From sequence record MW879341.1: a stretch of DNA of 64,000 nucleotides; one strand, 5' to 3'. Shown in pieces: positions 38,489 through 56,539 of the stretch. Each line of letters begins with the position of its first letter. Within the stretch, counting starts at the first letter, position 1. Below the pieces are notes generated by a model. It was given only the letters and a program-made list of their open reading frames with translations, did no database searches and was not told the DNA's origin. The translations under genes and the position numbers were made by a program.

Positions 38489-38531
38489 TTTCGACAACCT
38501 CAACAGGTTTGTGATACTCGGAGGACGTATA

Positions 38532-40742: not shown

Positions 40743-40753
40743 GAGGTTTTAAT

Positions 40754-41599
40754 ATGGCCACGCCAATCCCACGGAACTTACCCAGCGAGCAGATGGTAAT
40801 TGCGCTGATTAACCGTGATAACAATTTGAATCTTTCCAGTAGTGATGTCGTGGTGTCGGAACCTCGTAAGAATCCAACGCCTACTACCATTACAGGAACG
40901 ACTGCGGTACGTGACACCTTGGCTGATCTGTTAGCCGTGTACGGTGGCAACTTTAAAGAGTCTGCCCCAATTACGTATCGTCGACTGAATGCGGACACGA
41001 TCTTCGCCAAAGTCACCACAGTAATCCGCCCTAAGAATCAGGTTAACACCACCGACCTGATTGCCGACATTAACACTCTGTACGGTTTAGCACTGACTGT
41101 CGATGACGTGGTCAATGAACTGTTGGATCTGAACACTTTACCTTATTCATTAAAGGTGAAGTTCAAAGACGATAACCCGGCCTGGATTGGTAGCATTCCT
41201 GTTATTATCAAAAGGATGCCAACCGATATCGCAACAGTTGTGACAAATAACGTCCTGCCTGTACTGCGTTATCCAACCGGGCAGTCTACGTTGATACAGG
41301 GCGACCTGTACGCGTACTCACGCGACTTTACAGCTAATGTCAGTACATTGGTAGACATTTCCTTTACGTCGGTTCTGGACCCATTGGTGGCTATTCTGGC
41401 CGCTGAGTTCAAACCGGATGCTTGGGTTATGAAAGCCAGTGCATCGCCCTTTAACCTGTACGGTGCAACCGTGGTGTATAACGGGCCGGTCGTAGATACG
41501 TACTCGACTCGTCGTGACCGCGCTCGTTGTCTGGTGCTCCAGTTATCTAAGAGCTGCAACAATATGGCTGGTCGCTTAATCCTGCACTACGACGCATAG
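40754..41599 (+). CDS. Tail/baseplate protein with the shared paralogue N-domain (phiKZ gp130/131-like)
   Basis: ALINRDNNLNL..V.VSEP ... ITYRRLN; GAGGT RBS. Confidence 0.65.
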   Translation: MATPIPRNLPSEQMVIALINRDNNLNLSSSDVVVSEPRKNPTPTTITGTTAVRDTLADLLAVYGGNFKESAPITYRRLNADTIFAKVTTVIRPKNQVNTTDLIADINTLYGLALTVDDVVNELLDLNTLPYSLKVKFKDDNPAWIGSIPVIIKRMPTDIATVVTNNVLPVLRYPTGQSTLIQGDLYAYSRDFTANVSTLVDISFTSVLDPLVAILAAEFKPDAWVMKASASPFNLYGATVVYNGPVVDTYSTRRDRARCLVLQLSKSCNNMAGRLILHYDA

Positions 41600-41606
41600 G
41601 TGAATT

Positions 41607-42440
41607 ATGTCTATAGTAGAAACCTTCACTAAAGATACGCTACTCAAGCGCATAGAGGGGTTGAACACCCCGGTGCCTGTGGCGCTTAACAGTGATACGG
41701 TGACCGTGGGTAATCCAACTGTCGTAACGGGTGCTCACAACACCCAACTTAAACTCACTGGGTCTAGTCTTTATACTGAAGGGTACGAAGACATACTCGT
41801 GGGGACGGTTAATGTTGCTTACGATCGTTTGGATTTGGCTAAGCTGTTTAAGGGCGTCAGACTTTACTTCAAACTGTCTGACGACAAGCCGGTCGCTAGC
41901 TTGTACGCCTTCCTACCTACGTTATCTAATTTAGTGGGTGTGGCTTTGTATGAGGAGGACGTCAATGATGTTGTCATCACTCCAGCCACTGAGAAAGTTA
42001 CGGTGGTCGCTAAGAGTACGTCGTTAAACGTCACCGGAAAGGTTGACATTACTTTCTTCGTACCGCCAATCGATCTGGATAAACTCAAAGGCAACCTCGA
42101 TATCTTTAAAGACGACGTCAGTGTTTCTGATATGGTCTATAACACCATAGGCGGTAGTACGTTATTCCCCGTTAACGCCTATCGCTTAACAAAAGATGTC
42201 GACTTCAGTCGATACCGCAACGAATTAGCCAACATTGCCAGAACCGGCATGAATGATTCTACTAACCGCGTAAGTGTGGGTAGAATTCTTCGTAGGGAAT
42301 TCGGTCTCACAGTAGGCGACGCTATCAACCCCGACTATCGGGTCACGAGCGTTGTCAATGGGAACACTACCGTTGTAACGTTAAAGACATTAACTTCTAC
42401 GGATAAGTTCGAATTCAAATACACTGATGGGAGTGCATGA
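41607..42440 (+). CDS. Tail paralogue; short partner preceding LRR protein 1
   Basis: 277 aa. NTQLKLTG ... VNVAYDRLDLAKLF; overlaps the next gene (ATGA). Confidence 0.65.
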   Translation: MSIVETFTKDTLLKRIEGLNTPVPVALNSDTVTVGNPTVVTGAHNTQLKLTGSSLYTEGYEDILVGTVNVAYDRLDLAKLFKGVRLYFKLSDDKPVASLYAFLPTLSNLVGVALYEEDVNDVVITPATEKVTVVAKSTSLNVTGKVDITFFVPPIDLDKLKGNLDIFKDDVSVSDMVYNTIGGSTLFPVNAYRLTKDVDFSRYRNELANIARTGMNDSTNRVSVGRILRREFGLTVGDAINPDYRVTSVVNGNTTVVTLKTLTSTDKFEFKYTDGSA

Positions 42441-45109
42441 TGAGTGTGACTAACGTTAAGGTTAAGCAGGAGTTCATTGACTCCATTAACCGGGTTAACG
42501 GTACAGCATTGACTGCATCTGACCTAGTGCTTGACGGTGTAGCCAACGCCAGCGGTTCTGGTATAAACGCTAGTGTTGTAGGTACGGCAGTAGAAGGAAC
42601 GGACAGCAATGTCAAAGGGAGTAAAACGTTCCTCTATAACCGCATCAACCTGAACAGCATGGTTGGTAAGTTATGTCAAACGTTGACTGCACGACCGGTC
42701 ACCTATGTGGCTGAGTTGTTAGAAGACATCAATAAGGCTACCAAGCTCAACCTAACGTTGGATGACATTATCAACGATAAGCTTGACTTGCTCGGTGAGG
42801 AAGGTGAGACATTTACATTACGATGCCAACCGTCATCACCAAAATATACGGGTAGTCTACCGATCACCATGCATTTGAGTGGCACGGTGCTGTTGCGTGG
42901 TAGGATGTCGTTAGTTAAGGGTAAGAATTACAGTATCTATCCTAACTCACAAACAGCTATGGTGTCGAACGCGCCATTCACCACGTTTACTATAAACGGC
43001 GTCGACCACACGTTTAACCCTGATGGAACTTTCACCGCAAACGTAGAAACTGGCGAGTGGGATTTCTATTACAGCACTTCGTACCTTAGCGTCTTTGGTA
43101 GAAATGCACCAATTACACACATTGATCGCCTCATGTGCGTTGACGGGTCACTATCGTCTGGTGGTCCGGTATTCACTTATAACAACTCGTTATTAAGTAT
43201 CGGCGATGATATATTCCGGGGTAACGTAGGGTCGGTTTCTCTCTATCAGATGTTCCTCCAGTGCCGTAGTCTGAAAACTATCGGCACTGATTTCATGGCG
43301 GCTCCAGATGGCTACAATAGTCTGGACAGTACGTTCAGTGGGTGTAACGTACTAGAAAGTATGGGCGACACTATCGTTAGGGCCAGTACCCAGCCTTACA
43401 CTACTGCGACATCTCTGTTCAACGGTTGTGTTCTTTTGGAGCGCATTCCTGCGGGTCTCTTCTCTGGTGCTAGTAACCTTACCACCCTTAACAATGCGTT
43501 TTCTCAGATGGGTGCTAGGACTACTGACGGGTGTTGGGTTGGTGAGTCGCTGTTCGACGATGTAGTTGGGTTAAAGGCTATGGCGAGCTGCTTCGCTTCT
43601 GCCAAGATCTCCAACTGGCCTACTAAACTCTTCAAGAATCACCCTAACCTGGAAAACCTAACGATGGCTTTCCGGTCTAGCAACATCAGAACTATTCCTG
43701 ACGGCATGCTAGATAAGTGCTCTAAAGGTACCCTCATCATTGGAAGCGCCTTCAGTAACTGTACCCTTACATCTGTAGGTAGTAGAATCTTACCGCAGGG
43801 AAGTAAATGTCCAGCGTCGAGTTCCTTCTCTAATTCGAGGCTGTCGAATGTATCTAAGGACGTCTTTGCTGGAGCGTTGGTCACCGATGCGTATAGCATG
43901 TTCGCAGGTTCGACATTTACCGATAAGGTGCCAAACGTCTTTGCAAACCAATCTGCTATAACTTCTATTGCTAGGTTGTTTGCTAGCGCAAATGTAGCAT
44001 TGACTGACGATAATGCTAACATGTTCGCGGACCTCATTGGCGCTACGACTATGGCCAATCTGTTTAACGGCGCAACGTTAACTAACAGTATCATTCCGAA
44101 AGGTATGTTCGATCCACTGGTTAACGTTACTGACTGTACCCAAGCTTTCTATTTACTTAAAAGTTCTATCGATACCCCTATCGTTATTCACGATGGGTTA
44201 TTGGCTAAGATGGCCAACGCTGCTGATTTCACTTTACTGTTCTCTGGGGCAGTGAATCTCGATTTTAAAGGCTATGTGTTACCAGACAGTAAGTCCGCTA
44301 AAATTCTCACTGGCGCATTCCAAGTCATTGCAGATAACTATCCAGATTCTCTACTGAAGAACGCAGAGAATGTGGTTGCGGCTAATAACCTGTTTGTCGG
44401 TGCTAAGATAAATGCGATAGATGGTGCGCTCATCGGCACACTCAAATCCGTGACAGACCTTACGGGTGCTTTCAGGGTTGCTGGTAATCTCACCATTAAG
44501 AAGGGGGCGTTTGATAACTTACCGAACGTAGCTAACATCTCCAACTTAGCAAACGTCGGTGTAACCAGTAGTAACAGCGTGGTTATTGAAGAGGGTGCGT
44601 TTGATGGTGCGGTGGGTCTAACCAACGCATATCGCGCATTTGGTTTTATGGCTGGCGTTGACCTACCGAAAGGCTTGTTCAAGAATTGTAAATTGTTAAC
44701 CAATTTGGGTTCTATTTTCGAAAGGTCTACATTGACGGGAACGTTAGACGGATTCCTGAGCAAAGAGACTATGTCTAATCCACTTACCTCTACTGCTAAT
44801 GCGTTTAATGTGGCCGTCATCACCAACCTCAGTAAGTCCGGTGTGTTAAATCTGCCATTGGTAGGTACTGCGCTAATGACCTTTGCCAACAGTAAGAATG
44901 GGTTCCCTATCACTGTCGCTCAATTTTTAGCGTGGGTTGGCGTTAGTGCAACTAACCATTTCACGACTGATAAAGTGCAGACAGGTTTCATCCTGAATGC
45001 TACCTGGATTGAAGGGGAAACAGACGACCTCGTGCGTGGACTATGGCAGATCAGTGATGCCTCGCTCATTGACGACACTACCCGGAGAGCTGTTCTCGGT
45101 AGACTATAA
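42437..45109 (+). CDS. Tail paralogue N-domain fused to a BspA-type LRR solenoid (LRR protein 1)
   Basis: 890 aa. FLYNRINL N-domain, then about 20 repeats of xIPxxLFxx..xxFxx. Confidence 0.75.
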   Translation: MMSVTNVKVKQEFIDSINRVNGTALTASDLVLDGVANASGSGINASVVGTAVEGTDSNVKGSKTFLYNRINLNSMVGKLCQTLTARPVTYVAELLEDINKATKLNLTLDDIINDKLDLLGEEGETFTLRCQPSSPKYTGSLPITMHLSGTVLLRGRMSLVKGKNYSIYPNSQTAMVSNAPFTTFTINGVDHTFNPDGTFTANVETGEWDFYYSTSYLSVFGRNAPITHIDRLMCVDGSLSSGGPVFTYNNSLLSIGDDIFRGNVGSVSLYQMFLQCRSLKTIGTDFMAAPDGYNSLDSTFSGCNVLESMGDTIVRASTQPYTTATSLFNGCVLLERIPAGLFSGASNLTTLNNAFSQMGARTTDGCWVGESLFDDVVGLKAMASCFASAKISNWPTKLFKNHPNLENLTMAFRSSNIRTIPDGMLDKCSKGTLIIGSAFSNCTLTSVGSRILPQGSKCPASSSFSNSRLSNVSKDVFAGALVTDAYSMFAGSTFTDKVPNVFANQSAITSIARLFASANVALTDDNANMFADLIGATTMANLFNGATLTNSIIPKGMFDPLVNVTDCTQAFYLLKSSIDTPIVIHDGLLAKMANAADFTLLFSGAVNLDFKGYVLPDSKSAKILTGAFQVIADNYPDSLLKNAENVVAANNLFVGAKINAIDGALIGTLKSVTDLTGAFRVAGNLTIKKGAFDNLPNVANISNLANVGVTSSNSVVIEEGAFDGAVGLTNAYRAFGFMAGVDLPKGLFKNCKLLTNLGSIFERSTLTGTLDGFLSKETMSNPLTSTANAFNVAVITNLSKSGVLNLPLVGTALMTFANSKNGFPITVAQFLAWVGVSATNHFTTDKVQTGFILNATWIEGETDDLVRGLWQISDASLIDDTTRRAVLGRL

Positions 45110-45125
45110 ACCTAAGGTGGATTAA

Positions 45126-45920
45126 ATGGCCATTTACAATGGTGAATTTAAAGACGTAATCGCTGGCGCATTCAACGGGGTAAATAAACTCCCCTTTCCG
45201 ATTGCAGCCAACGAGTTTAACCTTGGGGTACCGGGGGTGGTAACACCCCCTTCCAAGGGCTTCAAGTACAACACTAAAACCAAGCTGACTCCCACCCAAG
45301 CAATTAATGCTAACGGCGACTCGTATGGCGGTAGTGTGGATATTCTATACCAACGGTTAGACTTAGGTCTGCTGTTCAAGGGTATCGATATTCAATGGCA
45401 GACCTCTGCCAACACTACCGGTGCTTTTCCAGTCTGGGTGCGCGACTTCATGGGTATACCCATGGAGGACGGAGACATCTTGACGGAGAATATCCCGTTA
45501 ACGGCCAATAACAGCTATATCGTTATTAAGGCCGCACCGACATCACCGTGGTTCATTGGTCAGTGTAAGGTTTACTTCACCAGAGGTAAACCGGTAATCA
45601 ACGACCTTATACCAGACGGGTGGGACACTGGTCTTTACGCAACACTCACCCAGGTCGACGCGGTGTATGCAATGAGTTACTACGCGGATTACTCGCTGGA
45701 CAAGGCACTGTTCCCTACCGCGACTAAAGTCGTAGCAAAAGCGGACTCTGTAATGCTCTGGCGTGCCCTGTGTGGTAGCCGCATTAACGACTGGCCTCTC
45801 TCTGGGACTAACTGCGTTATCTATAGCGGTACGGCTGCGGTGGTTAAAGCTGGAGGCAGGTCGGGTTTTAGTGGTTTAATGGTAATTCCCGAATTGAATA
45901 TTTGGGCACACTACAACTAA
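45126..45920 (+). CDS. Tail paralogue; short partner preceding LRR protein 2
   Basis: 264 aa. YNTKTKLT ... VDILYQRLDLGLLF, similar to the 41607 gene. Confidence 0.65.
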   Translation: MAIYNGEFKDVIAGAFNGVNKLPFPIAANEFNLGVPGVVTPPSKGFKYNTKTKLTPTQAINANGDSYGGSVDILYQRLDLGLLFKGIDIQWQTSANTTGAFPVWVRDFMGIPMEDGDILTENIPLTANNSYIVIKAAPTSPWFIGQCKVYFTRGKPVINDLIPDGWDTGLYATLTQVDAVYAMSYYADYSLDKALFPTATKVVAKADSVMLWRALCGSRINDWPLSGTNCVIYSGTAAVVKAGGRSGFSGLMVIPELNIWAHYN

Positions 45921-45929
45921 AGGTGAAGT

Positions 45930-48740
45930 ATGAACAGGTATGATTACAAAACTGCTCTTTTAAATAAGATCAATGAAAAGACTGGCATGGGTGCCGGTTG
46001 GGGCGATATGGTGGTGAGTAAGCCTGTTCATACAGACGGTGCTGTTGCCACACTAAACATCGCCCCTACGGCAACAGCCTACTTCAAAGGTAACGTTAAT
46101 GTCAACGTTACCCGCATGTCACTTAACAACAACCCACTTTTGTTTAAGAAGGTGGGTACTATCGTCAATAACGGGTCAGACTTCTTAGTCTTTAAAAGTT
46201 TCCCTAAGAGTCAAAGTGAGTTTCTCACCTTGTTATCCGAACGCTTGGGTGTGGAGATAACCAGCGATGACTTGCAAGTGCCACCGATGCCTGCCGAGTC
46301 GCAGAGTGATGTAAGTTTTACCGTCACCGCTTTGGACACAAGTCGTTGGTTCTACGGTAGTACTAAGGTAACATTTGTTGCTGACCGCACGCCTGTCATC
46401 AAGTTCGAATATTCACGCACGGATGACTTGACGGTTTCCTCCTCATCGCTGAGTAATGTCGTTTTGGTGGATGGGGTTCAACTGCCCGCTGGGTCTAACT
46501 ACACTATACCCAAAGGCAACCACACATTAGAGATTCGTTATTTCACACTGACTCAGTCTATGCCTATGGCTAAGTTCAACCCAACGCGGTTGATTGCACT
46601 ACGGCACTACGAGACTGGCAATGTGACAGGCATGTTCCAAAACGCCACCACGCTGACGTCTATTGATGAAGAAGCGCTCTACCTCGAATACGGTAGCTGC
46701 GCTAACCTCTTCTCTGGATGTACCGCGCTGGTGACGCTACCGAATAGTCTCTTTGCACCCGGAACTATCCAGTATAGTGCCACCGCATTACTGGCTGGTA
46801 CGGGGATCACTAAAACGCCGGCTACCTTATTTAAAAATCTAAGGATTAATGGTCCCGCTCTCTCGGAGATCTTCAAAGACTGCGTTAGCCTCAAAGAGGC
46901 CACGGGCAGTCTATTCAAGAACGTACAGGTCGACAACAGTATCGTCACCGTAACAAGTCTTTGGTACAATAGTGGTGTAGCAACTGCCTCGCCGTTGGTT
47001 TTAGATGGGCTAACGTCGATCAACTATCTATCCACACTGTTCGGAAACTGTGTGAACCTTGTTTCTGCACCCAATGGCTTATTTGACGGTTTATCGAAAC
47101 TCACGTCCGAGTATAATACCTTTGGCGGGTGTAGTAATTTGGTTACAGCACCGGTGAAACTATTCGATAAATGTCCCATACTAAAAACCATCTCCAGTAC
47201 GTTCTCATGGTGCCCTAAGTTAACTGCTGTAGATCCAAACGTATTCGGCGATTGTCCGGCACTCACTTCAATCTCCGGTGTGTTTTCTTCTAGCGGTATA
47301 ACGCAAGTCCCCGAGAAAATATTCTCTAAAATGCCTTTGCTCAACAGGGCAACTACCCTGTTCGATCGTTGTGCTGCGTTGAAGGCGGTTCCTGGTACGT
47401 TATTCAGCTACTCGCCGAAGTTAACCGTGATGACCGGTTTATTCCAGTATTCCGGTTTGGGCGATATTCCAGTAAACCTCTTCGCTAAAAACGTAGAGTT
47501 GCTGGATGTATCGAATACGTTCCAACTTATTAAGTGTGGCGATATTCCAGCGGATCTGTTCTTAAACAACACCAAGTTGAAAAACACGTCTAGTCTATTC
47601 TCCTCGGTGACCACGACGTCAATGCCACCTAATCTTTTCAGGGCGTGTCCGGCGTTGGAGGTTATCAAATCCACGTTCTACGGGTTACGGGGTGGCGACT
47701 TCAAGATAGCTGCTGCGTGCTTCCCATCTAACGCGTTGAAGGATATCTCCTATTGCTTCAAGAACTCATCGCTTACAGAGATTGAAGAGGGTACGTTCTA
47801 CAACCACACCGGTATAACGAATCTGGCTGAATGTTTTTACAGGTCTAGCCTAAGGTCTATCCCTAGCAATCTGATTCGGGTTATAGGTGACATCGTTAGC
47901 ATCAGTTCGTTGTTCTCACAGACCCAAGCCACCGATATTTATCAAAACGCACTATACGTTAACCATACTGGCACCGGACCCATGAAGGCTGACAATGTGT
48001 TCGCCAACAGCAGCCATACAGCGTCGGTACATGGTTCGGTTTCGTATATAGCAGGCATCGTGTCGACTACGGCGGGATTCCTTATGTGGTTCCCGGTGGT
48101 GATGTCTGACGATGAAGTGATTCGTGCGTTTGAGTTCAATATCCAGAGACCTAGCTCTGGGGGTATCGACGCCACCAATATGTTCGCTGGGTTCTATTAC
48201 CTTACGGGCAGTGGGTTGAAGTTATGTCAGAAAATCTTCTCTGTTTCTGCCGGTAGTGCGAACTTCAACAATACCAACTTTATCGATAGGTCATTCTTCC
48301 TGGACGACTACGACTCACTTGGATCGCCGTGGCAATCTACACCTAGGGCGGTGAACGTCTATAATTGGTTAACTATTGACGCGTACGCTCTCGGTGATGC
48401 AACTGCCGGTAAAAACGACTTTGTACCGCTGTATGCCACCTACTACTTGGACGTCCCCAGTTCACTCACTATTCCGCCAAGTGGTGACGTTTCCAACGTA
48501 GCTATCTCAGCAACCATCAATTCTTGGTTAACTGGGGTATTCTTTATGTTGGGGATGAACGTACCGGCCGCCTCGAAAGTATCTATCCGGCGTATTAATA
48601 AAACTGACTACGCTAGTTTCGCAGATCTCGGTCTTCGCGATGAGGTGAGTAGTGTAACGCTACTTACTTTCGATGGTGTTCTGAGTAGTGACTTAGTTGC
48701 TGCTTGTAACAACCCCAACAACTATCTTCTTTGTTCTTAA
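45930..48740 (+). CDS. Tail paralogue N-domain fused to a BspA-type LRR solenoid (LRR protein 2)
   Basis: 936 aa. VNVTRMSL N-domain, about 16-17 LRRs and an extra C-terminal domain. Confidence 0.75.
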   Translation: MNRYDYKTALLNKINEKTGMGAGWGDMVVSKPVHTDGAVATLNIAPTATAYFKGNVNVNVTRMSLNNNPLLFKKVGTIVNNGSDFLVFKSFPKSQSEFLTLLSERLGVEITSDDLQVPPMPAESQSDVSFTVTALDTSRWFYGSTKVTFVADRTPVIKFEYSRTDDLTVSSSSLSNVVLVDGVQLPAGSNYTIPKGNHTLEIRYFTLTQSMPMAKFNPTRLIALRHYETGNVTGMFQNATTLTSIDEEALYLEYGSCANLFSGCTALVTLPNSLFAPGTIQYSATALLAGTGITKTPATLFKNLRINGPALSEIFKDCVSLKEATGSLFKNVQVDNSIVTVTSLWYNSGVATASPLVLDGLTSINYLSTLFGNCVNLVSAPNGLFDGLSKLTSEYNTFGGCSNLVTAPVKLFDKCPILKTISSTFSWCPKLTAVDPNVFGDCPALTSISGVFSSSGITQVPEKIFSKMPLLNRATTLFDRCAALKAVPGTLFSYSPKLTVMTGLFQYSGLGDIPVNLFAKNVELLDVSNTFQLIKCGDIPADLFLNNTKLKNTSSLFSSVTTTSMPPNLFRACPALEVIKSTFYGLRGGDFKIAAACFPSNALKDISYCFKNSSLTEIEEGTFYNHTGITNLAECFYRSSLRSIPSNLIRVIGDIVSISSLFSQTQATDIYQNALYVNHTGTGPMKADNVFANSSHTASVHGSVSYIAGIVSTTAGFLMWFPVVMSDDEVIRAFEFNIQRPSSGGIDATNMFAGFYYLTGSGLKLCQKIFSVSAGSANFNNTNFIDRSFFLDDYDSLGSPWQSTPRAVNVYNWLTIDAYALGDATAGKNDFVPLYATYYLDVPSSLTIPPSGDVSNVAISATINSWLTGVFFMLGMNVPAASKVSIRRINKTDYASFADLGLRDEVSSVTLLTFDGVLSSDLVAACNNPNNYLLCS

Positions 48741-48749
48741 AGGTGAGGA

Positions 48750-51700
48750 ATGAAAAACGACCTCGACGAAGACCTGATACCATACTTGTCCAGACTTGCA
48801 AGTAAATCGGCCAAAGTTCCACTTAACGCATCCAACGTATCCTATTCGACAGATGGCAGGCATATAACGGTTACACCTATAGCTGGAGGCTTACCAAAGC
48901 TGGTTCAGGGTGCGTCAGGCGTGTTCACATATACGCGCTTGTCGCTTAATGAATTGGAGGCACAGTGGGGGCGGTTACGTATACCGGCAAAGACATACCC
49001 TAACTTTAACGCCTTTAAGGCTGCCGTACTACAGTACAACTCGGTTAGTCTCGATCCATCGGACGTTACTCTAACGTTCCCGCTTGATCTTTCCGGCCAG
49101 ACTACGTTTATCCTGACTGCTAACGCAAACTCTATTCGTCTCACCGGTAAAACGACAATGACGCTATTCACTCCAGCCATCGCACGGTTATCGTTCGATA
49201 TGCAGGCGAGCTTAGCAGGCGCGGGAAGACAAATCGTTTTAGGTTGTGTGTATAGTGCCTCACAACCCACCCCTGATAAGGTTAGTGTGACTTTAGACGG
49301 TGTGACATTAACACCAACCTTCAGTCAGATCTGGAACGTTGCTAACTGTTGGTATGTCAAAGTTACCACAACTAAAGATCTACCAAATGGGAATGTGCGC
49401 GTTACAATGGAGTCGTCACTTCCTGTCGGCACTGGTCACCGTGAGGAGTCTGGCGGGCAGTATTGGCCAACCAACGATATTGACTACCCGGTGGTGAAGC
49501 TCTACGAATATACGCAAAACACCATTTCACATCCGTCAGTGGGCTTATACAACAGAACACGGAATTCTGTAGACCTCACGATCAATGCTGATGCGTTGAG
49601 TAAAAACAAGGCGGCTGTGGATATTAGTGGGATGTTCTCTAACGCCAACATTACCAGTATACCTGCCGGACTGTTCGACGGGTTAGGTATTAGTGGTGCT
49701 TATTGCGCATTCATGTATTCTGGAATCACCTCATTACCCAACGCTTTGTTCGCTAAGGCTACGGTGAGTGGTAATTGGACTTCTGCTTTTGAGAATACAA
49801 ACCTCACCGCATTCCAAGACGGATTGTTCCCAGCCAAAACAACCATCACGAGTATGGCAAGGATGTTCTACTCGTGTACGAAGCTTGCTACAATCAACGC
49901 TAACGTGTTTAAACACGCTGCTGCGACATTGACCAACATTTCCTACGCCTTTAGTAATACGGCCTTTACAGCCGTTCCTACGGGGCTTCTGGATGGGTTG
50001 ACGACTGTAGACAACGCAACGTATCTGTTCGAGTACACGCAGTTCAGTTCTATCCCTAATAACCTCTTTGCTAGCCTGAAACAAATAACCAGCTTGGATG
50101 GTATTTTCTCAGGCTCGCAGTTGGGTGGGGCTGTACCTGCTGGTTTGTTCTCTGGCTTTGTTAATGCTGTCTCTGCACAGAACACATTCACTCGAGCTAA
50201 GATCACCACTATCCCGACCGACCTCTTTAAAGGCTGTACGAACATTCGTTCATTCAACTCGTGCTTCATTAACTGCGCTATGTTAACGAGTGTTCCAGAT
50301 ACGTTGTTTGCTGACTGTAAGCTGATTACGGATTTGAGTTCTGCCTTTAGTGGTTGTGAGGGTGCTTCACCATTCCCGGTGGGTATACTGAAAGGACTTC
50401 AGTATCTACAGCAAGCCGATAACGCCTTCTCCTACTTTGGAGATCGCGGTGACCAAGTTACGGTTAAGTTCACCAAAGAACTACTCGCTGACTGTAAGGC
50501 TTTGTCGAGTGCTAGCAGGATGTTTATGGCGTGTATGTTTGACTCCATCGAAGAAGGTGCTTTCGATAGTCAGACCTCACTCCAGAATGCTGCGAACTTC
50601 TTTGGTGGCGCGAGTTGGTCATCCAGTGGTGCGCCAATTACTTCAGTACCTGAGACGTTATTCCGTAACTGTCAGTCGCTGAGTAATATCACTGGTTTCT
50701 TTGCATTCGCTAAGTTCAAGACAGTGCCGGCTAAACTCTTCCAGAACCTTCCGAGTCGTGGTGGATTAAGATCGCTTAATGGTATATTCCATGGGTGTTC
50801 TGACCTCACCACTGTACCGGCAGATCTGTTCTTAGGGATGTCGAACGTCACTAACATCGACGAACTGTTTAGTGGATACCCTAGTCGCTATACGTCAGGA
50901 TTCACTACAATCCCGGTAGGTCTCTTTACACCGTTTGCAGATCGCATTGATAGCGCAATCAATACTTTCTCCTGTAGTAAGGTCACCACGTTAAAAGGGA
51001 CAGAGCTTGCGGGTATGTCTAACGTTACAACCATTGAGGGTATGTTTAGCCACACTCCAATCGTTAGCGTTCCGGCCGGGTTGTTTGACTCGATGGTAAG
51101 TATGTATCGTGCGGTGAGTTTGTTCGAAGGGTGTTCTAAACTCACTACGCTCCCTGCGAGTATCTTCAGTAAGTGCGTGAGGCTCAGTCGCTTCAACAGG
51201 ATGTTTGCTCAGTGTACCAGTCTGGAGACTTTGGTTCCTGGTTGGTTCGATAAGTTGGAAGGGATCTATGAGGGTATTGAAGTGTTTGCGGGTTGTACTG
51301 CACTCACCACAGTCCCCTCTAAACTATTCCCACCACTGACGAACATCATGGATCTTACGTCGATGTTCAACCAGTGTGTTAATCTGAAGTTGGTTAAGAC
51401 TGGTTGGATTGACTTCAGTCTCAACACGCAGCGTTGTATTCTGAATAGTGCGTTTGCCGGGTGCAATCCTGCTTTAGATTTTGAAACAGGTGCTTTGCCC
51501 TATAAAGCAAACTACGATATGACATACATGCTTTCTCAGATGAACATTACACAACCGAACGGTGGTGTTCTGACGATTGGGTTTGAGGGTGATGTCACTC
51601 GACTGGCTAAAGCATTCAAGTCGGTAGATAACTCCGGCCCACCTTCAGCTAGAAGTATGTTAACGATCTACAACAACACGACGACCAACTATAACCTCAC

Positions 51701-51791
51701 CGGTGCTGCACGTACAGTTCTTACCGCGATGGGGTTAGATCAGTCCGATATCAGTACGGTATTCGGTCCCTGGACGACTATTGTTTGGTAA
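48750..51791 (+). CDS. Tail paralogue N-domain fused to a BspA-type LRR solenoid (LRR protein 3)
   Basis: 1013 aa. FTYTRLSL N-domain and about 22 LRRs (IPAGLFDG, VPTGLLDG, IPTDLFKG, VPAGLFDS and others). Confidence 0.8.
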   Translation: MKNDLDEDLIPYLSRLASKSAKVPLNASNVSYSTDGRHITVTPIAGGLPKLVQGASGVFTYTRLSLNELEAQWGRLRIPAKTYPNFNAFKAAVLQYNSVSLDPSDVTLTFPLDLSGQTTFILTANANSIRLTGKTTMTLFTPAIARLSFDMQASLAGAGRQIVLGCVYSASQPTPDKVSVTLDGVTLTPTFSQIWNVANCWYVKVTTTKDLPNGNVRVTMESSLPVGTGHREESGGQYWPTNDIDYPVVKLYEYTQNTISHPSVGLYNRTRNSVDLTINADALSKNKAAVDISGMFSNANITSIPAGLFDGLGISGAYCAFMYSGITSLPNALFAKATVSGNWTSAFENTNLTAFQDGLFPAKTTITSMARMFYSCTKLATINANVFKHAAATLTNISYAFSNTAFTAVPTGLLDGLTTVDNATYLFEYTQFSSIPNNLFASLKQITSLDGIFSGSQLGGAVPAGLFSGFVNAVSAQNTFTRAKITTIPTDLFKGCTNIRSFNSCFINCAMLTSVPDTLFADCKLITDLSSAFSGCEGASPFPVGILKGLQYLQQADNAFSYFGDRGDQVTVKFTKELLADCKALSSASRMFMACMFDSIEEGAFDSQTSLQNAANFFGGASWSSSGAPITSVPETLFRNCQSLSNITGFFAFAKFKTVPAKLFQNLPSRGGLRSLNGIFHGCSDLTTVPADLFLGMSNVTNIDELFSGYPSRYTSGFTTIPVGLFTPFADRIDSAINTFSCSKVTTLKGTELAGMSNVTTIEGMFSHTPIVSVPAGLFDSMVSMYRAVSLFEGCSKLTTLPASIFSKCVRLSRFNRMFAQCTSLETLVPGWFDKLEGIYEGIEVFAGCTALTTVPSKLFPPLTNIMDLTSMFNQCVNLKLVKTGWIDFSLNTQRCILNSAFAGCNPALDFETGALPYKANYDMTYMLSQMNITQPNGGVLTIGFEGDVTRLAKAFKSVDNSGPPSARSMLTIYNNTTTNYNLTGAARTVLTAMGLDQSDISTVFGPWTTIVW

Positions 51792-51864
51792 TAGTGTAAT
51801 AGTATGACCTGATGCGTTATTAATGGTGGTAACGCATCCAATCCACAACTGGAGTAAGTCAAAA

Positions 51865-52410
51865 ATGGCAATTACTGCACAAACTTCTAAGTTGGCTTTG
51901 CTGGCGCTTCTGAACGCTGACAACAAGACCAATCTGACCCTGGACCAAGTAGCACTGGCTGCGCCTGCTGCAATCGCTGACGCGGCTGCTGGCGACCGTA
52001 ACACCACTGTTACCGTAACTGGCGTTGACGCAGACAAGCTGTCTGGCTCTGTTGACGTTAAATATACCCGTCAGGACATCTCTAAATCTCTGAGCGTGTC
52101 CAAGTACGAGTTCAGCAACCCTGCTGCAACTGCTGAAGAAGTTGTTGCCGAAATCGTTTCTGGCGTCCTGGCTAAACAGCCGGTCCCTTACGAAGAAGGT
52201 AGCTACACTGCTGTAGCAACTGCAATCGCCGCTGAAGACGAAAAGTCTCAGGGTGGCCTGTACAACTGGGAAGTAGCCATCACTGTGAACGGTCACTACG
52301 TTCTGACTGGTGCTGCCACTGTTCTGGTTAACAGCAGCAAGCAAGAACTGAGCGCCGTAGTTGGCACAACTGATCTGAACGGCTTCTCTGAAGACGACGT
52401 GAAAGCGTAA
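51865..52410 (+). CDS. Tail paralogue, probably abundant
   Basis: ATG 51865 after GGAG. RNTTVTVTG..SVDVKYTRQDI; MCP-like codon bias; has its own terminator. Confidence 0.7.
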   Translation: MAITAQTSKLALLALLNADNKTNLTLDQVALAAPAAIADAAAGDRNTTVTVTGVDADKLSGSVDVKYTRQDISKSLSVSKYEFSNPAATAEEVVAEIVSGVLAKQPVPYEEGSYTAVATAIAAEDEKSQGGLYNWEVAITVNGHYVLTGAATVLVNSSKQELSAVVGTTDLNGFSEDDVKA

Positions 52411-52444
52411 TCAGTAAGTCCGGCTGGTCAGCTGTGATAACGGG

Positions 52445-52490
52445 CACACAGCCACACTTCGGTGTGGTTGTGTTTCCCTCTTTTATTTCG
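52445..52490 (+). terminator. Hairpin ACACAGCCACAC-TTCG-GTGTGGTTGTGT followed by a T-tract
   Basis: Long stem with UUCG loop. Its TTTTATTTCG tail matches the 8451 terminator. Confidence 0.8.
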
Positions 52491-52504
52491 TATGGGGTTT
52501 AACT

Positions 52505-53458
52505 ATGCGGCAATTTGCAAATTCCTCGGAACAGAGTCTGCTTGACCTTGTCAACGAAACCAATGATTCTTCGCTGGATTTGTCCGAGGTAAGTTTAGAT
52601 TCTCCGATCTCTAATGCGACGGCAGAAAAGAATACGCAAGTGACATTGAACGGTAAGGGTGTATTTGGTGGTCAGACATTGGCTGTCAATTATGCGCGTC
52701 AGGATGCTAAAGTGGTATTTGGTGAAACGCCATCTGTCGCTGTAGTAACTGATGGTAAAACTACCACTGAGATTGTCCAGAGTGTATTGCATAAACTGGC
52801 CATGTCTTCAGGTGTACCAGTTAACGAAACCACGGTAGTGGGTAATTACGCAGACAACAAAGCGGTATTGGATTTCACCAAACACTTCGTACTGTCTGGC
52901 ACTCTATCGTTCAATGTGTCTTCAATTGTTCTTACTGATCTCAGCACTCTGGTTGCGACTAAGTCTACGTTGGATCACTTTAAAGCTGGTGAGACCTTTA
53001 CTCAGGACACGAGCTTAGATTGTATCCTTGACTTGATCGATAGCACTAACTCTATCAAGTTGGATCGTACCGCAATCACTGTAGGCAAACCGTCTGCGTT
53101 TGGTGGTGCAAGTAACCAGCCACGCGATCTGGTTACGATTACTGCCAAGGGTGACAGCGAGGTCTATAAGAATAACTTCTCGTTCCAGTATAACCGACTG
53201 AACATTGAAGAACTCATTACAGCGCCGGTGGAGCTTAATGCGGTGAGTAACCTGAATGCATTCTATGCACAGGCTACAGCCGGTGTTATTGCACCAACCC
53301 TGCAAGAACAACTGGGTATCCCAATTTCACCAGATCAACTCCGTGTGCGTAATATCGCAACGGTAGACGACGGGTTCACTGCGACGGTGAGCATTTTGGA
53401 TAACTATGTCTTGCGTTCAGCCGGCGGTATCACGGTACATTCCGCAAAAGCTAACTAA
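52505..53458 (+). CDS. Tail paralogue with two copies of the shared domain
   Basis: LLDLVNETN..VNYARQD and ILDLIDSTN..FQYNRLN. Confidence 0.7.
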   Translation: MRQFANSSEQSLLDLVNETNDSSLDLSEVSLDSPISNATAEKNTQVTLNGKGVFGGQTLAVNYARQDAKVVFGETPSVAVVTDGKTTTEIVQSVLHKLAMSSGVPVNETTVVGNYADNKAVLDFTKHFVLSGTLSFNVSSIVLTDLSTLVATKSTLDHFKAGETFTQDTSLDCILDLIDSTNSIKLDRTAITVGKPSAFGGASNQPRDLVTITAKGDSEVYKNNFSFQYNRLNIEELITAPVELNAVSNLNAFYAQATAGVIAPTLQEQLGIPISPDQLRVRNIATVDDGFTATVSILDNYVLRSAGGITVHSAKAN

Positions 53459-53467
53459 GGACCCTGA

Positions 53468-54019
53468 ATGGCTCTCCATGTAGACTCAACCAAACAGGCG
53501 TTAGTAGATCTCGCTAACGCCATGAATAAGAAATCGTTTAGCCTGAGTACGATCACTGTGGGGCCACCAAGTCCTGACGATAGTGTACCAGGTATGAACT
53601 CCGTTGCTAAGTTCTCAGCCATTAAAGGGAAAGGGTATCGTGGCGATGTCGATGTGCACTACATCCGTTTGACTACGGAAGAAGCCTTCGGTATCGACAA
53701 ATACAAATACCATCTGGAAAGCCTGGACAATATCGACCCAGAAGCAATCCTCAAAGAGGTATTAACCAAACTTTCCACAGACTGGTCACTTCCGTTAACC
53801 GGTAAAGGTGAAATCGGTGAACACACCTACGAGAAAGTGGGTGACATCGACGATATCGTTATCGGAACTATCCTGGTTGATCTGTCTCCTAACTACGTCC
53901 TGCACGAGTATCTGGAGATCTCACTGATTAACCCGAAGATCCCACTGCCTGACGTAATTGTGATTACTCGTCTTGACGGATTCCGTGAAGAAGATGTCGA
54001 GCTGGAAGATAACGGTTAA
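53468..54019 (+). CDS. Tail paralogue
   Basis: LVDLANAMN..GYRGDVDVHYIRLT; ends VIVITRLDGF. Confidence 0.7.
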   Translation: MALHVDSTKQALVDLANAMNKKSFSLSTITVGPPSPDDSVPGMNSVAKFSAIKGKGYRGDVDVHYIRLTTEEAFGIDKYKYHLESLDNIDPEAILKEVLTKLSTDWSLPLTGKGEIGEHTYEKVGDIDDIVIGTILVDLSPNYVLHEYLEISLINPKIPLPDVIVITRLDGFREEDVELEDNG

Positions 54020-54032
54020 CGCGCTATTGTAG

Positions 54033-54062
54033 AGAGGTGGTCTAGTACCACCTCTTTATGCC
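54033..54062 (+). terminator. Hairpin AGAGGTGG-loop-CCACCTCT followed by TTATGCC
   Basis: 8-bp stem after the stop at 54019. Confidence 0.75.
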
Positions 54063-54108
54063 ATCGGTTAAATTATATGCTTAAACCTTATTCTTTGAGA
54101 GGTAGTCT

Positions 54109-54507
54109 ATGTCATTTCAGTTGACCTCCCGCTCCCGACTGATTGCACAATTAAATCAAGATCGTGGCCGCAACTTCGGACCTGGCGATTTCACTTATGG
54201 TAAACCTCGTGTTGATGACGACGGTCTTACGCATGTAACCATCACGCCGGTCACTGAGGAAACCAACCAAGGTCAACCGATTGAGTTGGTCTACGAGCGT
54301 CGGGTAATTCGCAATACGAGCCAGGTTGACCCTACTGATAAAGAAGCAGTAGGTGAGCTTGTAAAATCATTAGCCATTGCCGTACGCGCTGAATTTGAAC
54401 CAGGGTGTTTCTGGACAGTCGAGCGTGACGGTAAGACCATCCTCATTATTGACGACTACGTTGTTGATGGTGAGATCATTCTGGAGGTTACAGATGAAAG
54501 CCTCTGA
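54109..54507 (+). CDS. Tail paralogue (minimal version)
   Basis: 132 aa. LIAQLNQDRG..YGKP..ELVYERR; GAGAGGT RBS. Confidence 0.65.
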   Translation: MSFQLTSRSRLIAQLNQDRGRNFGPGDFTYGKPRVDDDGLTHVTITPVTEETNQGQPIELVYERRVIRNTSQVDPTDKEAVGELVKSLAIAVRAEFEPGCFWTVERDGKTILIIDDYVVDGEIILEVTDESL

Positions 54508-55057
54508 ACGTAGGCTGTTGGACATTATCAATAATAGTAACCGCATGAATCTGAATGCGGAGACTGTTTCGTTCGGGAGTCCCCGAACCTCACCTGAGCG
54601 TGAGAACAATACATGGATTGAGGTCTCTGCTTATCCAGGTGCAACAATCTATGACGGTTTAACCACGGTGCGTTATAATCGACAGGACTCGCGTTCTATC
54701 GGAAAACGTAGTGTGATTGAACTGGGTATTCTGGAGTTGGCACAAGCGCAGGATAACATCGCTGCTGCACTGACTCAACTCTACGACATCCCCTGCGATG
54801 CTAGTGAACTCCGCGTAAGGACAATGATGCGTCTTAATGACGTACAAGGCATTGTCGTTGTGGACTTCATTAACCATCCTCTGGTTTACGGTAGCTTAAC
54901 AGCCAGATTAACCTTTGGTCGTGCGGTACTCCCTATCGTTCTACTCAAGACGAACCTTACCAGTTTCTCTGAGTCGGACGTACAGGTAGTCGACCTTAAC
55001 ACTGCTTTGTCCACTCCAACACTGTCGGGCTTCGGAACGACAGACATTCAGAAATAG
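54494..55057 (+). CDS. Tail paralogue
   Basis: ATG 54494 after GGAGGT. LLDIINNSN..FGSP..NNT..VRYNRQD; two C-terminal L..V....L.(G/S)F motifs. Confidence 0.7.
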   Translation: MKASERRLLDIINNSNRMNLNAETVSFGSPRTSPERENNTWIEVSAYPGATIYDGLTTVRYNRQDSRSIGKRSVIELGILELAQAQDNIAAALTQLYDIPCDASELRVRTMMRLNDVQGIVVVDFINHPLVYGSLTARLTFGRAVLPIVLLKTNLTSFSESDVQVVDLNTALSTPTLSGFGTTDIQK

Positions 55058-55068
55058 AGGCTTAGAGA

Positions 55069-55989: not shown

Positions 55990-56539
55990 CGATCGTTACC
56001 GGTATATCGCCATTGACCCAGGGACTGACACTCTGGGCATTGCAGTGTGTGAAATAAACCTACGTACGCGTGAACTCACCATTCTGGATGTGACGACGCT
56101 TAAAGCGTCTAAACAGATTACTCACTATCCGGGTATGGTAGAGACACACGGCGAGAAACAAACACGTTTACACGCACACCGTGAAACATTGAAACACTTG
56201 TTCCTACACTGGCGTCCAGACGCTATCGTTTCAGAGTCACCATTCATGGGTCGCTTCGCAGCGGCCTTTGGTGCTTTGGTCGAGTGTATGCAAATACTGC
56301 GTGAAGCTGTGATGGAGTATCGTATTTACCAGCCTCTTGAAACTGTTGATCCACCGTCCGCTAAAAAGGCTGTGGGTGTGAAAGCGAAAGGGTCTAATAA
56401 AGACGACATCATGAAAGCAGTTATCGCTGACACCACCATTCACTTTGCTGAAGGGTTGTCACGCACTGGTCACTCTGAACACGTCTACGATGCAATTGCA
56501 GTGGGCAAGTGGAAGTATCTTAACTTTTTGGGAATTTAA
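55943..56539 (+). CDS. ruvC: RuvC-like Holliday junction resolvase
   Basis: IAIDPGTDTLG, VSESPF, VDPPSAKKAVG..KDD and EHVYDAIAVG, giving the D-E-D catalytic set. Confidence 0.9.
   Translation: MSLQRLLRVLTTFASNDRYRYIAIDPGTDTLGIAVCEINLRTRELTILDVTTLKASKQITHYPGMVETHGEKQTRLHAHRETLKHLFLHWRPDAIVSESPFMGRFAAAFGALVECMQILREAVMEYRIYQPLETVDPPSAKKAVGVKAKGSNKDDIMKAVIADTTIHFAEGLSRTGHSEHVYDAIAVGKWKYLNFLGI

What the first reader, a model, noticed from the sequence alone, without database searches (positions are those of the whole stretch)
41607..51791. Three divergent BspA-type LRR solenoids fused to a tail-docking domain: a candidate LRR-based receptor-binding repertoire
Seen: three 890-1013 aa proteins, each with the jumbo-phage tail paralogue N-domain, a linker domain and about 16-22 copies of a ~24-26 aa repeat (xIPxxLFxx..L..xxxxFxxx). 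Framework residues are conserved, while the intervening Tyr/Ser/Asn-rich positions differ between repeats and proteins. Known: BspA/TpLRR repeats are ligand-binding solenoids best known from bacterial adhesins, whereas phage receptor-binding proteins are usually trimeric beta-fibres or spikes. Inference: the phage displays several monomeric LRR 'arms' on its baseplate, expanded by tandem duplication and repeat gain/loss, for host, glycan or surface attachment. This is the strongest candidate for an undescribed system in the window.
Basis: partly seen in the sequence, partly recalled or inferred. Interest (0 to 1): 0.8.

Follow-up and report, generated by a model that had tools for sequence, protein, structure and literature searches.

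The report
Swappable LRR arms on jumbo-phage baseplate
Three large unannotated proteins of an Erwinia jumbo phage join a baseplate-fibre attachment module to long leucine-rich-repeat solenoids, and two of them lie in a gene cassette that is exchanged between otherwise near-identical phages, so they are probably host-recognition proteins of a kind first proposed in a 2026 preprint.

Summary
The window is Erwinia phage pEa_SNUABM_54, a phiKZ-like jumbo phage in which every gene is annotated 'hypothetical'. gp38, gp40 and gp41 (889, 936 and 1013 aa) each have three parts. The first is an N-terminal module of the DUF7941 family; its phiKZ counterpart, the N-terminal domain of gp127, is modelled in the outer peripheral baseplate. 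The second is a small beta-sandwich. The third is about 17-23 repeats of 26-27 residues, which AlphaFold2 folds with high confidence as an LRR solenoid.

The idea is not new. A 2026 preprint on phage Goslar describes DUF7941 proteins as baseplate-anchored filaments that carry host-recognition domains, LRR among them. I found that Goslar gp161 is itself a DUF7941 plus DUF285 fusion.

What is added here: the stretch from inside gp39 to the end of gp41 is an exchangeable cassette. In three phages whose flanking genes are mostly 85-100% identical, gp40 falls to 62% or 32% and gp41 to 34%, or gp41 is replaced by its N-module alone. gp38 stays 95-99.9% identical.

Virion location, ligand and monomeric state remain unshown. 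Verdict: new member of a recently proposed kind, moderate interest.

The parts
40754..41599 (+). gp36: full-length DUF7941 protein, orthologue of phiKZ gp127 (peripheral baseplate). It heads the paralogue array.
   Evidence: Pfam DUF7941 E 6e-59 over profile positions 5-275 of 276. PDB 9xqd chain 0 'PHIKZ127' E 4e-11. Homologues in 175 phiKZ-like phage records.
41607..42440 (+). gp37: small DUF7941 paralogue (N-module, linker and a divergent C-part).
   Evidence: Pfam DUF7941 E 8.5e-21, profile positions 1-216. 97-99% identical in the close relatives.
42440..45109 (+). gp38: LRR arm 1. N-module aa 1-150, middle domain, about 19 repeats at aa 256-790 (nt 43205-44809), short C-tail. This is the conserved arm.
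   Evidence: Pfam DUF7941 E 1.8e-16 and phrog_9915 E 9e-36. Repeat hits. 99.9% and 95% aa identity in L011 and L015.
45126..45920 (+). gp39: small DUF7941 paralogue. The left edge of the variable cassette lies inside it, and its C-terminal two thirds vary together with gp40 and gp41. Candidate adaptor.
   Evidence: Pfam DUF7941 E 4.6e-20. 74% and 69% aa identity in relatives whose neighbours are 95-100%. The drop in nucleotide identity starts at about 45,350 in both comparisons.
45930..48740 (+). gp40: LRR arm 2. N-module aa 1-152, beta domain about aa 147-226, about 17 repeats at aa 230-668 (nt 46617-47933), and a C-terminal region of about 270 aa (aa 669-936) with unresolved fold.
   Evidence: Pfam DUF7941 26.6 bits and phrog_9915 E 1.4e-53. 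AlphaFold2 pLDDT 82-98 over aa 230-660. Foldseek matches to Toll5A, a designed LRR and LGR5, E 1e-8. 62% (L011), 32% (L015) and 29% (L004) aa identity.
48750..51791 (+). gp41: LRR arm 3. Divergent N-module aa 1-142, beta-sandwich aa 145-256, about 23 repeats at aa 283-905 (nt 49596-51464), and a low-confidence C-tail.
   Evidence: hhalign to the DUF7941 N-module profile 91%, E 1e-6. phrog_9915 E 6.5e-78. AlphaFold2 pLDDT above 90 over most of aa 340-880. Foldseek matches to SHOC2, LGR5, LRRTM2 and TLRs. phmmer hit to PDB 5a5c (LRRTM) E 1.6e-12. 34% aa identity in L015 and L004; L011 has only a 140-aa N-module gene in its place.
45350..51780 (+). Exchangeable cassette: the C-terminal part of gp39, gp40 and gp41.
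   Evidence: Nucleotide identity to L011 falls from about 100% to 53-75% at about 45,350 and returns to about 99% at 51,783. The same bounds are seen against L015. The gp41 orthologue of L015 is closer to that of distant L004 (51%) than to the window's (34%).
51865..55057 (+). Downstream small DUF7941 paralogues gp42, gp43 (two N-modules in tandem), gp44 and gp46, with gp45 between them. They complete a ten-gene DUF7941 array.
   Evidence: Pfam and PHROG hits. The same arrangement is found in L004, L007, L011 and L015.

Best explanation
gp38, gp40 and gp41 are late virion proteins of a phiKZ-like (chimallivirus) phage. Each uses a DUF7941 N-terminal module to join the DUF7941 assembly at the outer periphery of the baseplate. 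Each holds out a long single-chain LRR solenoid that binds a structure on the bacterial surface.

gp38 is the conserved arm. gp40 and gp41 are specificity arms that are replaced as a block, together with the C-terminal part of the small paralogue gp39, by recombination between related phages.

Shown here: the domain architecture, the LRR fold (as a prediction), homology of the N-module to the phiKZ gp127 domain solved in the baseplate, and the cassette-like hypervariability.

Inferred: presence in the virion, attachment by the N-module, outward display, binding to the host surface, and the nature of the ligand.
For: - Architecture.
- LRR fold: AlphaFold2 pLDDT above 90 over the repeats of gp41 and gp40. 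Foldseek top hits are all LRR ectodomains at E about 1e-8. phmmer hits to LRRTM, VLR and repebody chains.
- Attachment module: gp36 matches PHIKZ127 in PDB 9xqd, and the N-module profile matches its residues 15-148. The phiKZ atlas docks gp127 in the outer peripheral baseplate (PMC13250141).
- Precedent: the Goslar preprint finds all ten of its DUF7941 proteins by virion mass spectrometry, shows gp22 filaments, and proposes host recognition through appended carbohydrate-binding, hydrolase or LRR domains. Goslar gp161 is DUF7941 (E 1e-24) plus DUF285 (E 4.5e-22). Eowyn gp154 is DUF7941 plus about 12 repeats.
- Independent fusions of the same repeat type to tail proteins: Klebsiella P2-like Tail_P2_I + Big_2 + LRR, and a Phapecoctavirus tail protein at the end of a fibre cluster.
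- Evolution typical of specificity determinants. Against L011, flanks are 98-100%, gp40 is 62% and the gp41 solenoid is absent. Against L015, flanks are 85-97.5%, gp40 is 32% and gp41 is 34%. Between L004 and L007, flanks are 82-98% and the gp40 and gp41 orthologues are 65% and 68%. The gp41 orthologues are incongruent with the backbone.
- Fold kept while the surface changes: framework positions differ at 24%, other positions at 50% (odds ratio 3.1, p 5e-14).
- Context: tight co-directional array next to the phiKZ-type capsid gene and virion structural genes.
Against: - There is no direct evidence that these three proteins are in the virion. The record annotates them only as hypothetical.
- The Goslar fibre-cloud model is itself a proposal in a preprint.
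- Substitutions are not concentrated on the positions I assigned to the concave face (0.496 against 0.498), so no focused binding patch is visible.
- Synonymous sites are saturated, so positive selection cannot be told from import of old alleles.
- The N-modules and C-terminal regions model poorly.
- gp41's N-module is recognised only by profile-profile comparison.
- The hosts of the metagenomic relatives are unknown, so cassette alleles cannot be linked to host differences.
Confidence: 0.6

Rival explanations
1. The LRR proteins are structural parts of the peripheral baseplate or fibre network. The solenoids would act as rigid spacers or protein-protein connectors between virion components, not as binders of the host surface.
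For: - gp38 is highly conserved (95-99.9%) among close relatives.
- LRRs are general protein-protein interaction scaffolds.
- The phiKZ and Goslar peripheral baseplates contain much unassigned density.
- Variable positions are not concentrated on one face.
Against: - Internal structural connectors should co-evolve slowly with their partners. Yet gp40 and gp41 drop to 32-62% identity in backbones of 85-100%.
- One relative lacks the gp41 solenoid altogether.
- The same repeat type ends tail proteins of unrelated phages.
Confidence: 0.15
2. The arms bind something other than the infection receptor, such as exopolysaccharide, biofilm matrix or plant surface. This would keep particles where hosts are found, as proposed for Ig-like decoration proteins, and the true receptor-binding proteins would lie elsewhere in the genome.
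For: - The closest cellular relatives of the repeats are surface proteins that also carry BACON, Big_2 and fimbrillin-type domains.
- The Goslar model is a long-range 'cloud' for first contact.
- Goslar also encodes conventional tail fibres.
Against: - Cassette exchange of this intensity is best known for host-specificity determinants.
- The distinction from the main explanation is one of ligand, not of architecture.
- Nothing in the sequence points to a non-bacterial ligand.
Confidence: 0.12
3. The proteins are packaged and ejected into the cell, or act inside the infected cell. The LRRs would bind host proteins, for example defence sensors.
For: - Chimalliviruses package and inject many proteins.
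- LRRs are common in protein sensing.
- Rapid turnover also typifies counter-defence genes.
Against: - The N-module is homologous to a domain solved on the outside of the baseplate, not to the PF12699 inner-body family.
- The genes lie within the structural DUF7941 array.
- The independent fusion is to the baseplate wedge protein gpI.
Confidence: 0.06

Closest known systems
Chimallivirus DUF7941 fibre proteins with appended recognition domains (Goslar gp161, gp86, gp92; Basu et al., bioRxiv 10.64898/2026.04.21.720040)
   Same: - The N-terminal DUF7941 module is the same.
- Goslar gp161 also carries DUF285-type repeats.
- The genes sit among small DUF7941 paralogues.
- The proposed role in host recognition at the peripheral baseplate is the same.
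   Different: - Goslar gp161 is 483 aa, with a short repeat region (72 residues matched to DUF285). The window has three proteins with about 17-23 repeats each.
- BLAST finds no similarity between gp41 and Goslar gp86 or gp92. gp86 carries a TIM-barrel domain instead.
- The exchangeable cassette and the conserved-versus-variable split among arms are not described there.
phiKZ gp127 / gp126 (outer peripheral baseplate; PDB 9xqd; PMC13250141)
   Same: gp36 is the gp127 orthologue. The N-modules of the array, those of gp38 and gp40 included (gp41's was left out of the profile), match gp127 residues 15-148, which is the part modelled in the baseplate.
   Different: According to the preprint, phiKZ has only three DUF7941 proteins. 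No LRR is described in the cited passages (not tested here). The phiKZ fibres are built from the separate gp131-135 family, to which no match was found.
Klebsiella P2-like prophage 'tail protein I' (ST16-OXA48phi5.4 gp35; P0047)
   Same: It has the same repeat type (17 or more units, 24-29% identity to gp40 and gp41) at the C-end of a baseplate protein, with an Ig-like or beta domain between anchor and solenoid.
   Different: The anchor is Tail_P2_I, not DUF7941. It is a single copy next to a conventional tail-fibre gene, in a 38-kb temperate phage. It is an independent fusion.
BspA-type LRR_5 / DUF285 / 26-residue PARCEL repeat surface proteins of bacteria and large phages
   Same: - Repeat length of about 26 residues, and a shared conserved Phe and Cys/Asn-type core.
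- The cellular homologues found with gp40 and gp41 carry PF13306 and PF03382.
- Many large phages encode proteins annotated this way.
   Different: All three window proteins score below the curated cut-offs of these models. The Pro-x-x-Leu-Phe element resembles typical VLR/LRRTM-type repeats instead.
Variable lymphocyte receptors and other LRR ectodomains (LRRTM2, LGR5, Toll/TLR, SHOC2)
   Same: Predicted fold, and sequence-level repeat similarity. The idea of a conserved scaffold with varied surface residues is also shared.
   Different: There is no evolutionary membership and no somatic assembly. Variation here arises by exchange of whole alleles between phages. TM-scores are modest (0.2-0.6) because curvature and length differ.
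Classical phage receptor-binding proteins (trimeric fibres, beta-helix tailspikes)
   Same: Position in a tail or baseplate gene cluster; a conserved N-terminal anchor with a variable distal part; horizontal exchange.
   Different: No trimerisation element or beta-helix is predicted. Foldseek matches to tailspikes and depolymerases are insignificant (probability below 0.15).

Membership tests
DUF7941 (PF25613) chimallivirus baseplate-fibre family | Sequence match to the DUF7941 N-terminal globular module | tested here: met
   gp38 60.9 bits (cut-off 27). gp40 26.6 bits, plus phrog_1037 E 1.4e-7. gp41 only by hhalign, 91%, E 1e-6. The N-module profile matches phiKZ gp127 residues 15-148, E 2.5e-8.
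DUF7941 (PF25613) chimallivirus baseplate-fibre family | Encoded by a phiKZ-like (chimallivirus) genome, among other DUF7941 paralogues | tested here: met
   PhiKZ_MCP E 9e-182 at 28092-30371. Ten DUF7941 genes lie between 40754 and 55057. gp36 homologues occur only in phiKZ-like jumbo phages.
DUF7941 (PF25613) chimallivirus baseplate-fibre family | Linker and C-terminal domain that dock on the next protomer (head-to-tail filament) | tested here: not met
   In gp38 and gp40 only profile positions 1-153 of 276 are matched; the beta domain and the LRR follow. They could accept a partner's linker but have no canonical donor part. This fits the fusion proteins described for Goslar.
DUF7941 (PF25613) chimallivirus baseplate-fibre family | Presence in purified virions at the peripheral baseplate | not testable with these tools
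   Shown only for Goslar proteins (mass spectrometry) and phiKZ gp127 (cryo-EM) in the papers read.
Leucine-rich repeat superfamily (fold) | Tandem units of 20-30 residues with a conserved hydrophobic framework | tested here: met
   21, 14 and 13 units at E < 0.05, against fewer than 0.1 in shuffles. Period 26-27. Near-invariant Pro3, Leu6, Phe7 and Phe20.
Leucine-rich repeat superfamily (fold) | Solenoid structure matching solved LRR proteins | tested here: met
   AlphaFold2 pLDDT above 90 over the repeats of gp41 and gp40. Foldseek probability 1.00 to SHOC2, LGR4/5, LRRTM2, Toll and TLRs. This is a prediction only. gp38 was not modelled.
BspA-type LRR_5 (PF13306) / DUF285 (PF03382) / TIGR02167 26-residue repeat | Score at or above the curated cut-off of the family model | tested here: not met
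   LRR_5 18.3 and 18.0 bits (cut-off 27.7). DUF285 22 bits (cut-off 25). TIGR02167 26.8 bits (cut-off 30). gp40 has no hit. Related, but a divergent branch (phrog_9915).
BspA-type LRR_5 (PF13306) / DUF285 (PF03382) / TIGR02167 26-residue repeat | Homologues recovered by sequence search belong to the family | tested here: met
   Most hits at E 1e-20 to 1e-72 carry PF03382 and/or PF13306, often with BACON, Big_2 or fimbrillin-type domains.
phiKZ gp131-135 tail-fibre paralogue family | gp131-like N-terminal segment | tested here: inconclusive
   No PDB chain other than PHIKZ127 matched gp36, the N-module profile or the three proteins. I could not confirm that the gp131-135 N-segments are in the searched set.
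Trimeric fibre / tailspike receptor-binding proteins | Trimeric beta-helix, triple-helix or coiled-coil shaft | tested here: not met
   No such element is in the models. Viral Foldseek matches to tailspikes and depolymerases have probability below 0.15. The oligomeric state itself was not testable.

The most novel reading that the evidence does not exclude
The LRR proteins are chain-terminating 'plug-in' heads of hetero-oligomeric DUF7941 filaments. They have the acceptor N-module but no donor linker or C-domain, so each would cap a chain of small paralogues.

The C-terminal part of gp39 would be the cassette-specific adaptor that threads onto the N-modules of gp40 and gp41. That would explain why it is exchanged with them as one block, with the same two junctions each time.

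This would be a modular, non-trimeric receptor-binding system with a built-in exchange unit. It would be distinct from the fibre and tailspike adaptors known in other phages.
Probability: 0.25. Interest if true: 0.65.

Novelty: new member of a known kind. Interest (0 to 1): 0.45.

Why it matters
How phiKZ-like jumbo phages recognise their hosts is still largely open. The outer baseplate and fibres are the least resolved parts of the phiKZ and Goslar structures.

This locus gives comparative support for the recently proposed DUF7941 recognition fibres:
- long LRR solenoids are attached to the baseplate-associated module;
- one arm is conserved and two are swapped as a defined cassette between near-identical genomes;
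- the same solenoid type has been independently recruited by a P2-like baseplate protein.

In the papers I could search, no LRR domain has been shown by experiment to be a phage receptor-binding domain. These proteins are therefore well-defined candidates for structural and proteomic description. They also give names to five 'hypothetical' genes in phages of a plant-pathogen host.

Tried and rejected
- Recent tandem duplication or repeat-number instability: rejected. TRF finds no DNA-level repeat. Close orthologues align without indels. Only one 54-residue (two-repeat) difference separates gp40 from a distant orthologue.
- A focused hypervariable binding face: not supported. The putative concave positions vary no more than the other non-framework positions.
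- dN/dS: uninformative, because dS is saturated in the variable genes.
- Homology of gp41 to Goslar gp86 and gp92: none.
- IMG/VR scan with gp39: no relatives found.
- Cultured-phage database: no close relative other than the record itself.
- Promoter and terminator scans: fewer sites than in shuffles, so uninformative.
- C-terminal region of gp40 (about 270 aa) and all the N-modules: AlphaFold2 confidence is too low to interpret.
- Possible slip, declared: my script printed the 23-letter consensus line of the repeat profile, and one search used it as column labels. I do not repeat it here and give column counts instead.

Full report
**Identity and context**

The 10.2-kb interval is 100% identical to Erwinia phage pEa_SNUABM_54 (MW879341.1, 272.6 kb, host Erwinia amylovora), positions 41607-51791. 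Every gene there is annotated 'hypothetical protein'.

The phage is phiKZ-like. gp30 (28092-30371) matches the PhiKZ major capsid protein model at E 9e-182, and its neighbours match phiKZ-type virion and polymerase PHROGs.

From 40754 to 55057 there is a tight, co-directional array of ten genes with the Pfam DUF7941 module: gp36-44 and gp46. gp43 carries the module twice. gp36 is the full-length member and matches chain 0 of PDB 9xqd, 'PHIKZ127', at E 4e-11. Its homologues occur in 175 phage records, all phiKZ-like jumbo phages.

**Checking the observation**

The three long ORFs are as described: gp38 (42440-45109, 889 aa), gp40 (45930-48740, 936 aa) and gp41 (48750-51791, 1013 aa). The interval also contains the small paralogues gp37 and gp39.

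A repeat profile built iteratively from the proteins finds many units:

| Protein | Units at domain E < 0.05 | Mean in 50 shuffles | Units with laxer hits and models |
|---|---|---|---|
| gp41 | 21 | 0.02 | about 23 |
| gp38 | 14 | 0.08 | about 19 |
| gp40 | 13 | 0.08 | about 17 |

Five other large proteins of the window give no hits. Units are spaced 26-27 residues apart.

Framework columns are almost fixed:
- Pro at position 3: 30 of 30 repeats.
- Leu/Ile/Met at position 6: 37 of 37.
- Phe/Leu at position 7: 41 of 42.
- Phe at position 20: 41 of 42.
- Cys/Ser/Thr at position 23: 26 of 26.

The other columns have entropies of 2.5-3.3 bits and are rich in Ser, Thr, Asn, Asp, Ala and Gly. Tyr is minor.

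A note on procedure: one search printed the consensus line of my repeat profile and one search used it as labels. I report column counts only and have deleted nothing.

**Fold**

AlphaFold2 on a 27-sequence alignment gives gp41 a mean pLDDT of 78. Most 10-residue blocks of the repeat region between residues 340 and 880 average above 90. There is a beta-sandwich at 145-256 (pLDDT 76-89) and a poorly defined N-module and C-tail. gp40 gives pLDDT 82-98 over residues 230-660; its N-module and its last 270 residues are unresolved.

Foldseek against the PDB returns only LRR proteins at the top, at E about 1e-8 and probability 1.00: SHOC2, LGR4/5, LRRTM2, Toll/Toll5A, TLR3/7/8/9 and a designed LRR. 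Plain sequence search already links gp41 to the LRRTM design 5a5c (E 1.6e-12) and to lamprey VLRs and repebodies.

The repeats are therefore an LRR solenoid, as a prediction. gp38 was not modelled.

Family models are another matter. LRR_5, DUF285 and TIGR02167 all score below their curated cut-offs. 'BspA-type' is thus a relationship rather than a membership, although most cellular homologues recovered at E 1e-20 to 1e-72 do carry DUF285 or LRR_5 together with BACON, Big_2 or fimbrillin-type domains.

**The N-module**

| Protein | Evidence for a DUF7941 N-module |
|---|---|
| gp38 | 60.9 bits, profile positions 1-151 of 276 |
| gp40 | 26.6 bits, just under the 27-bit cut-off |
| gp41 | hhalign against a 13-sequence N-module alignment: 91%, E 1e-6 |

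The N-module profile matches residues 15-148 of phiKZ gp127 in 9xqd at E 2.5e-8. This profile was built from gp36-40, 42, 44, 46 and their L004 orthologues, and does not include gp41's N-module. The phiKZ atlas docks gp127 into the outer peripheral baseplate (PMC13250141).

The Goslar preprint (10.64898/2026.04.21.720040) names the family. It reports the following:
- All ten Goslar members are found in virions by mass spectrometry.
- Purified gp22 forms filaments.
- Prediction suggests that the linker and C-domain of one protomer dock on the N-domain of the next.
- These proteins are proposed to form a flexible fibre 'cloud' at the baseplate.
- Three members carry carbohydrate-binding, hydrolase and/or LRR domains for host recognition.

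I checked those three members. Goslar gp161 is DUF7941 (E 1e-24) plus DUF285 (E 4.5e-22). gp86 is DUF7941 plus a tail-sheath-type TIM barrel. gp92 has no Pfam hit. Klebsiella phage Eowyn gp154 is DUF7941 plus about 12 repeats.

**Independent fusions**

The same repeat type occurs elsewhere on tail proteins.
- It forms the C-terminal 600 residues of 'tail protein I' of a P2-like Klebsiella prophage. The architecture is Tail_P2_I + Big_2 + at least 17 repeats. The gene lies between the baseplate genes and the tail-fibre gene, and its cluster has 1551 member sequences.
- It also ends an 890-aa 'tail protein' at the end of the fibre cluster of Phapecoctavirus phages.
- DUF285/BspA-type proteins are annotated in many large phages.

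**Comparative evidence (the main new result)**

Four relatives were recovered from public assemblies. All keep the three-arm arrangement except L011, which lacks the third solenoid. Amino-acid identities:

| Comparison | Flanking genes | gp38 | gp39 | gp40 | gp41 |
|---|---|---|---|---|---|
| Window vs L004 (distant) | 62-75% | 38% | 45% | 29% | 34% |
| L004 vs L007 | 82-98% | 93% | 90.5% | 65% | 68% |
| Window vs L011 | 98-100% | 99.9% | 74% | 62%, no indel | replaced by a 140-aa gene, 54% identical to gp41's N-module |
| Window vs L015 | 85-97.5% | 95% | 69% | 32% | 34% |

- Each arm pairs with its positional orthologue in L004, so the triplication is old.
- In the L004-L007 pair, the drop in the gp40 orthologue lies in the solenoid (37-58%), not in the N-terminal 300 residues (77-90%).
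- L011 is a 246-kb contig and L015 an 82-kb contig.
- The gp41 orthologue of L015 is closer to that of distant L004 (51%) than to the window's (34%). That is evidence of horizontal exchange.
- In both close comparisons, nucleotide identity collapses at about 45,350, inside gp39, and recovers at about 51,770-51,783, at the end of gp41.

The unit of exchange is therefore the C-terminal two thirds of gp39 plus gp40 plus gp41. gp38 stays outside it.

Within the repeats of close pairs, framework positions differ at 24% and all other positions at 50% (odds ratio 3.1, p 5e-14). The positions I assigned to the concave strand are no more variable than the rest.

dS is saturated. There are no DNA-level tandem repeats. 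Apart from one two-repeat length difference, repeat number is stable.

**Interpretation**

The best reading (confidence 0.6) is that these are virion proteins attached through their DUF7941 N-module to the DUF7941 assembly at the baseplate periphery. They would expose single-chain LRR solenoids that bind the bacterial surface, with one conserved arm and two exchangeable specificity arms.

Shown: the architecture, the predicted fold, homology of the anchor to a solved baseplate domain, and cassette behaviour.

Inferred: virion presence, orientation, ligand and oligomeric state.

The arms have only the acceptor part of the DUF7941 module. A further, more speculative reading is that they cap chains of small paralogues and that gp39's C-part is their co-transferred adaptor.

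Rivals are a purely structural role (0.15), adhesion to non-receptor material such as matrix or plant surfaces (0.12), and an ejected or intracellular host-protein binder (0.06).

**Novelty**

These are new members of a recently proposed kind. They are notable for the size and number of the solenoids and for the clearly delimited exchange cassette. The literature searches returned no experimental demonstration of an LRR receptor-binding domain in a phage. That leaves the class interesting but unproven.

Noticed in passing
window 52505-53458 (gp43): gp43 carries two DUF7941 N-modules in tandem. It is a second variable spot: 99% identical in L011 but only 38% in L015, whose neighbours are 85-97% identical.
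   Followed up: partly
L011:12821-13243: In a relative that is otherwise 98-100% identical, a 140-residue gene stands in place of gp41. It matches only gp41's N-module (54% identity), so that phage has two LRR arms, not three.
   Followed up: yes
L002:4822-7848 (Klebsiella phage ST16-OXA48phi5.4 gp35): The P2-type baseplate protein gpI is fused to a Big_2 domain and at least 17 repeats of the same LRR type. The protein cluster has 1551 member sequences in Klebsiella pneumoniae.
   Followed up: partly
L014:2829-5501 (Phapecoctavirus Mt1B1_P17 gp118): An 890-aa 'tail protein', last gene of a tail-fibre cluster that includes a colanic-acid-degrading protein, ends in a stretch of the same repeat type (32% identity to gp41 over 146 residues).
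   Followed up: no
window 33392-35842 (gp33): This 816-aa protein of unknown function is only 69% identical in L015, while the adjacent gp34 and gp35 are 88-92% identical. It may be another fast-evolving gene.
   Followed up: no
window 47400-47560 (gp40 aa 491-544): gp40 is longer than its L004 orthologue by a single 54-residue block, which equals two repeats. This is the only repeat-number change seen among all the orthologue pairs.
   Followed up: partly
window 38000-56000: Sigma-70-like promoter matches are fewer than in shuffles (13 against 23.3 +/- 5.1). Terminator-like sites are not enriched. Genes gp35 to gp41 are separated by 7-16 bases or overlap, as expected for a single late transcription unit read by the phage's own polymerase.
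   Followed up: no
window 38469-38532 and 42437-42440: The longest ORFs start upstream of the annotated starts of gp35 (TTG at 38469 against 38532) and gp38 (ATG at 42437 against 42440). The start choice does not affect the conclusions.
   Followed up: no
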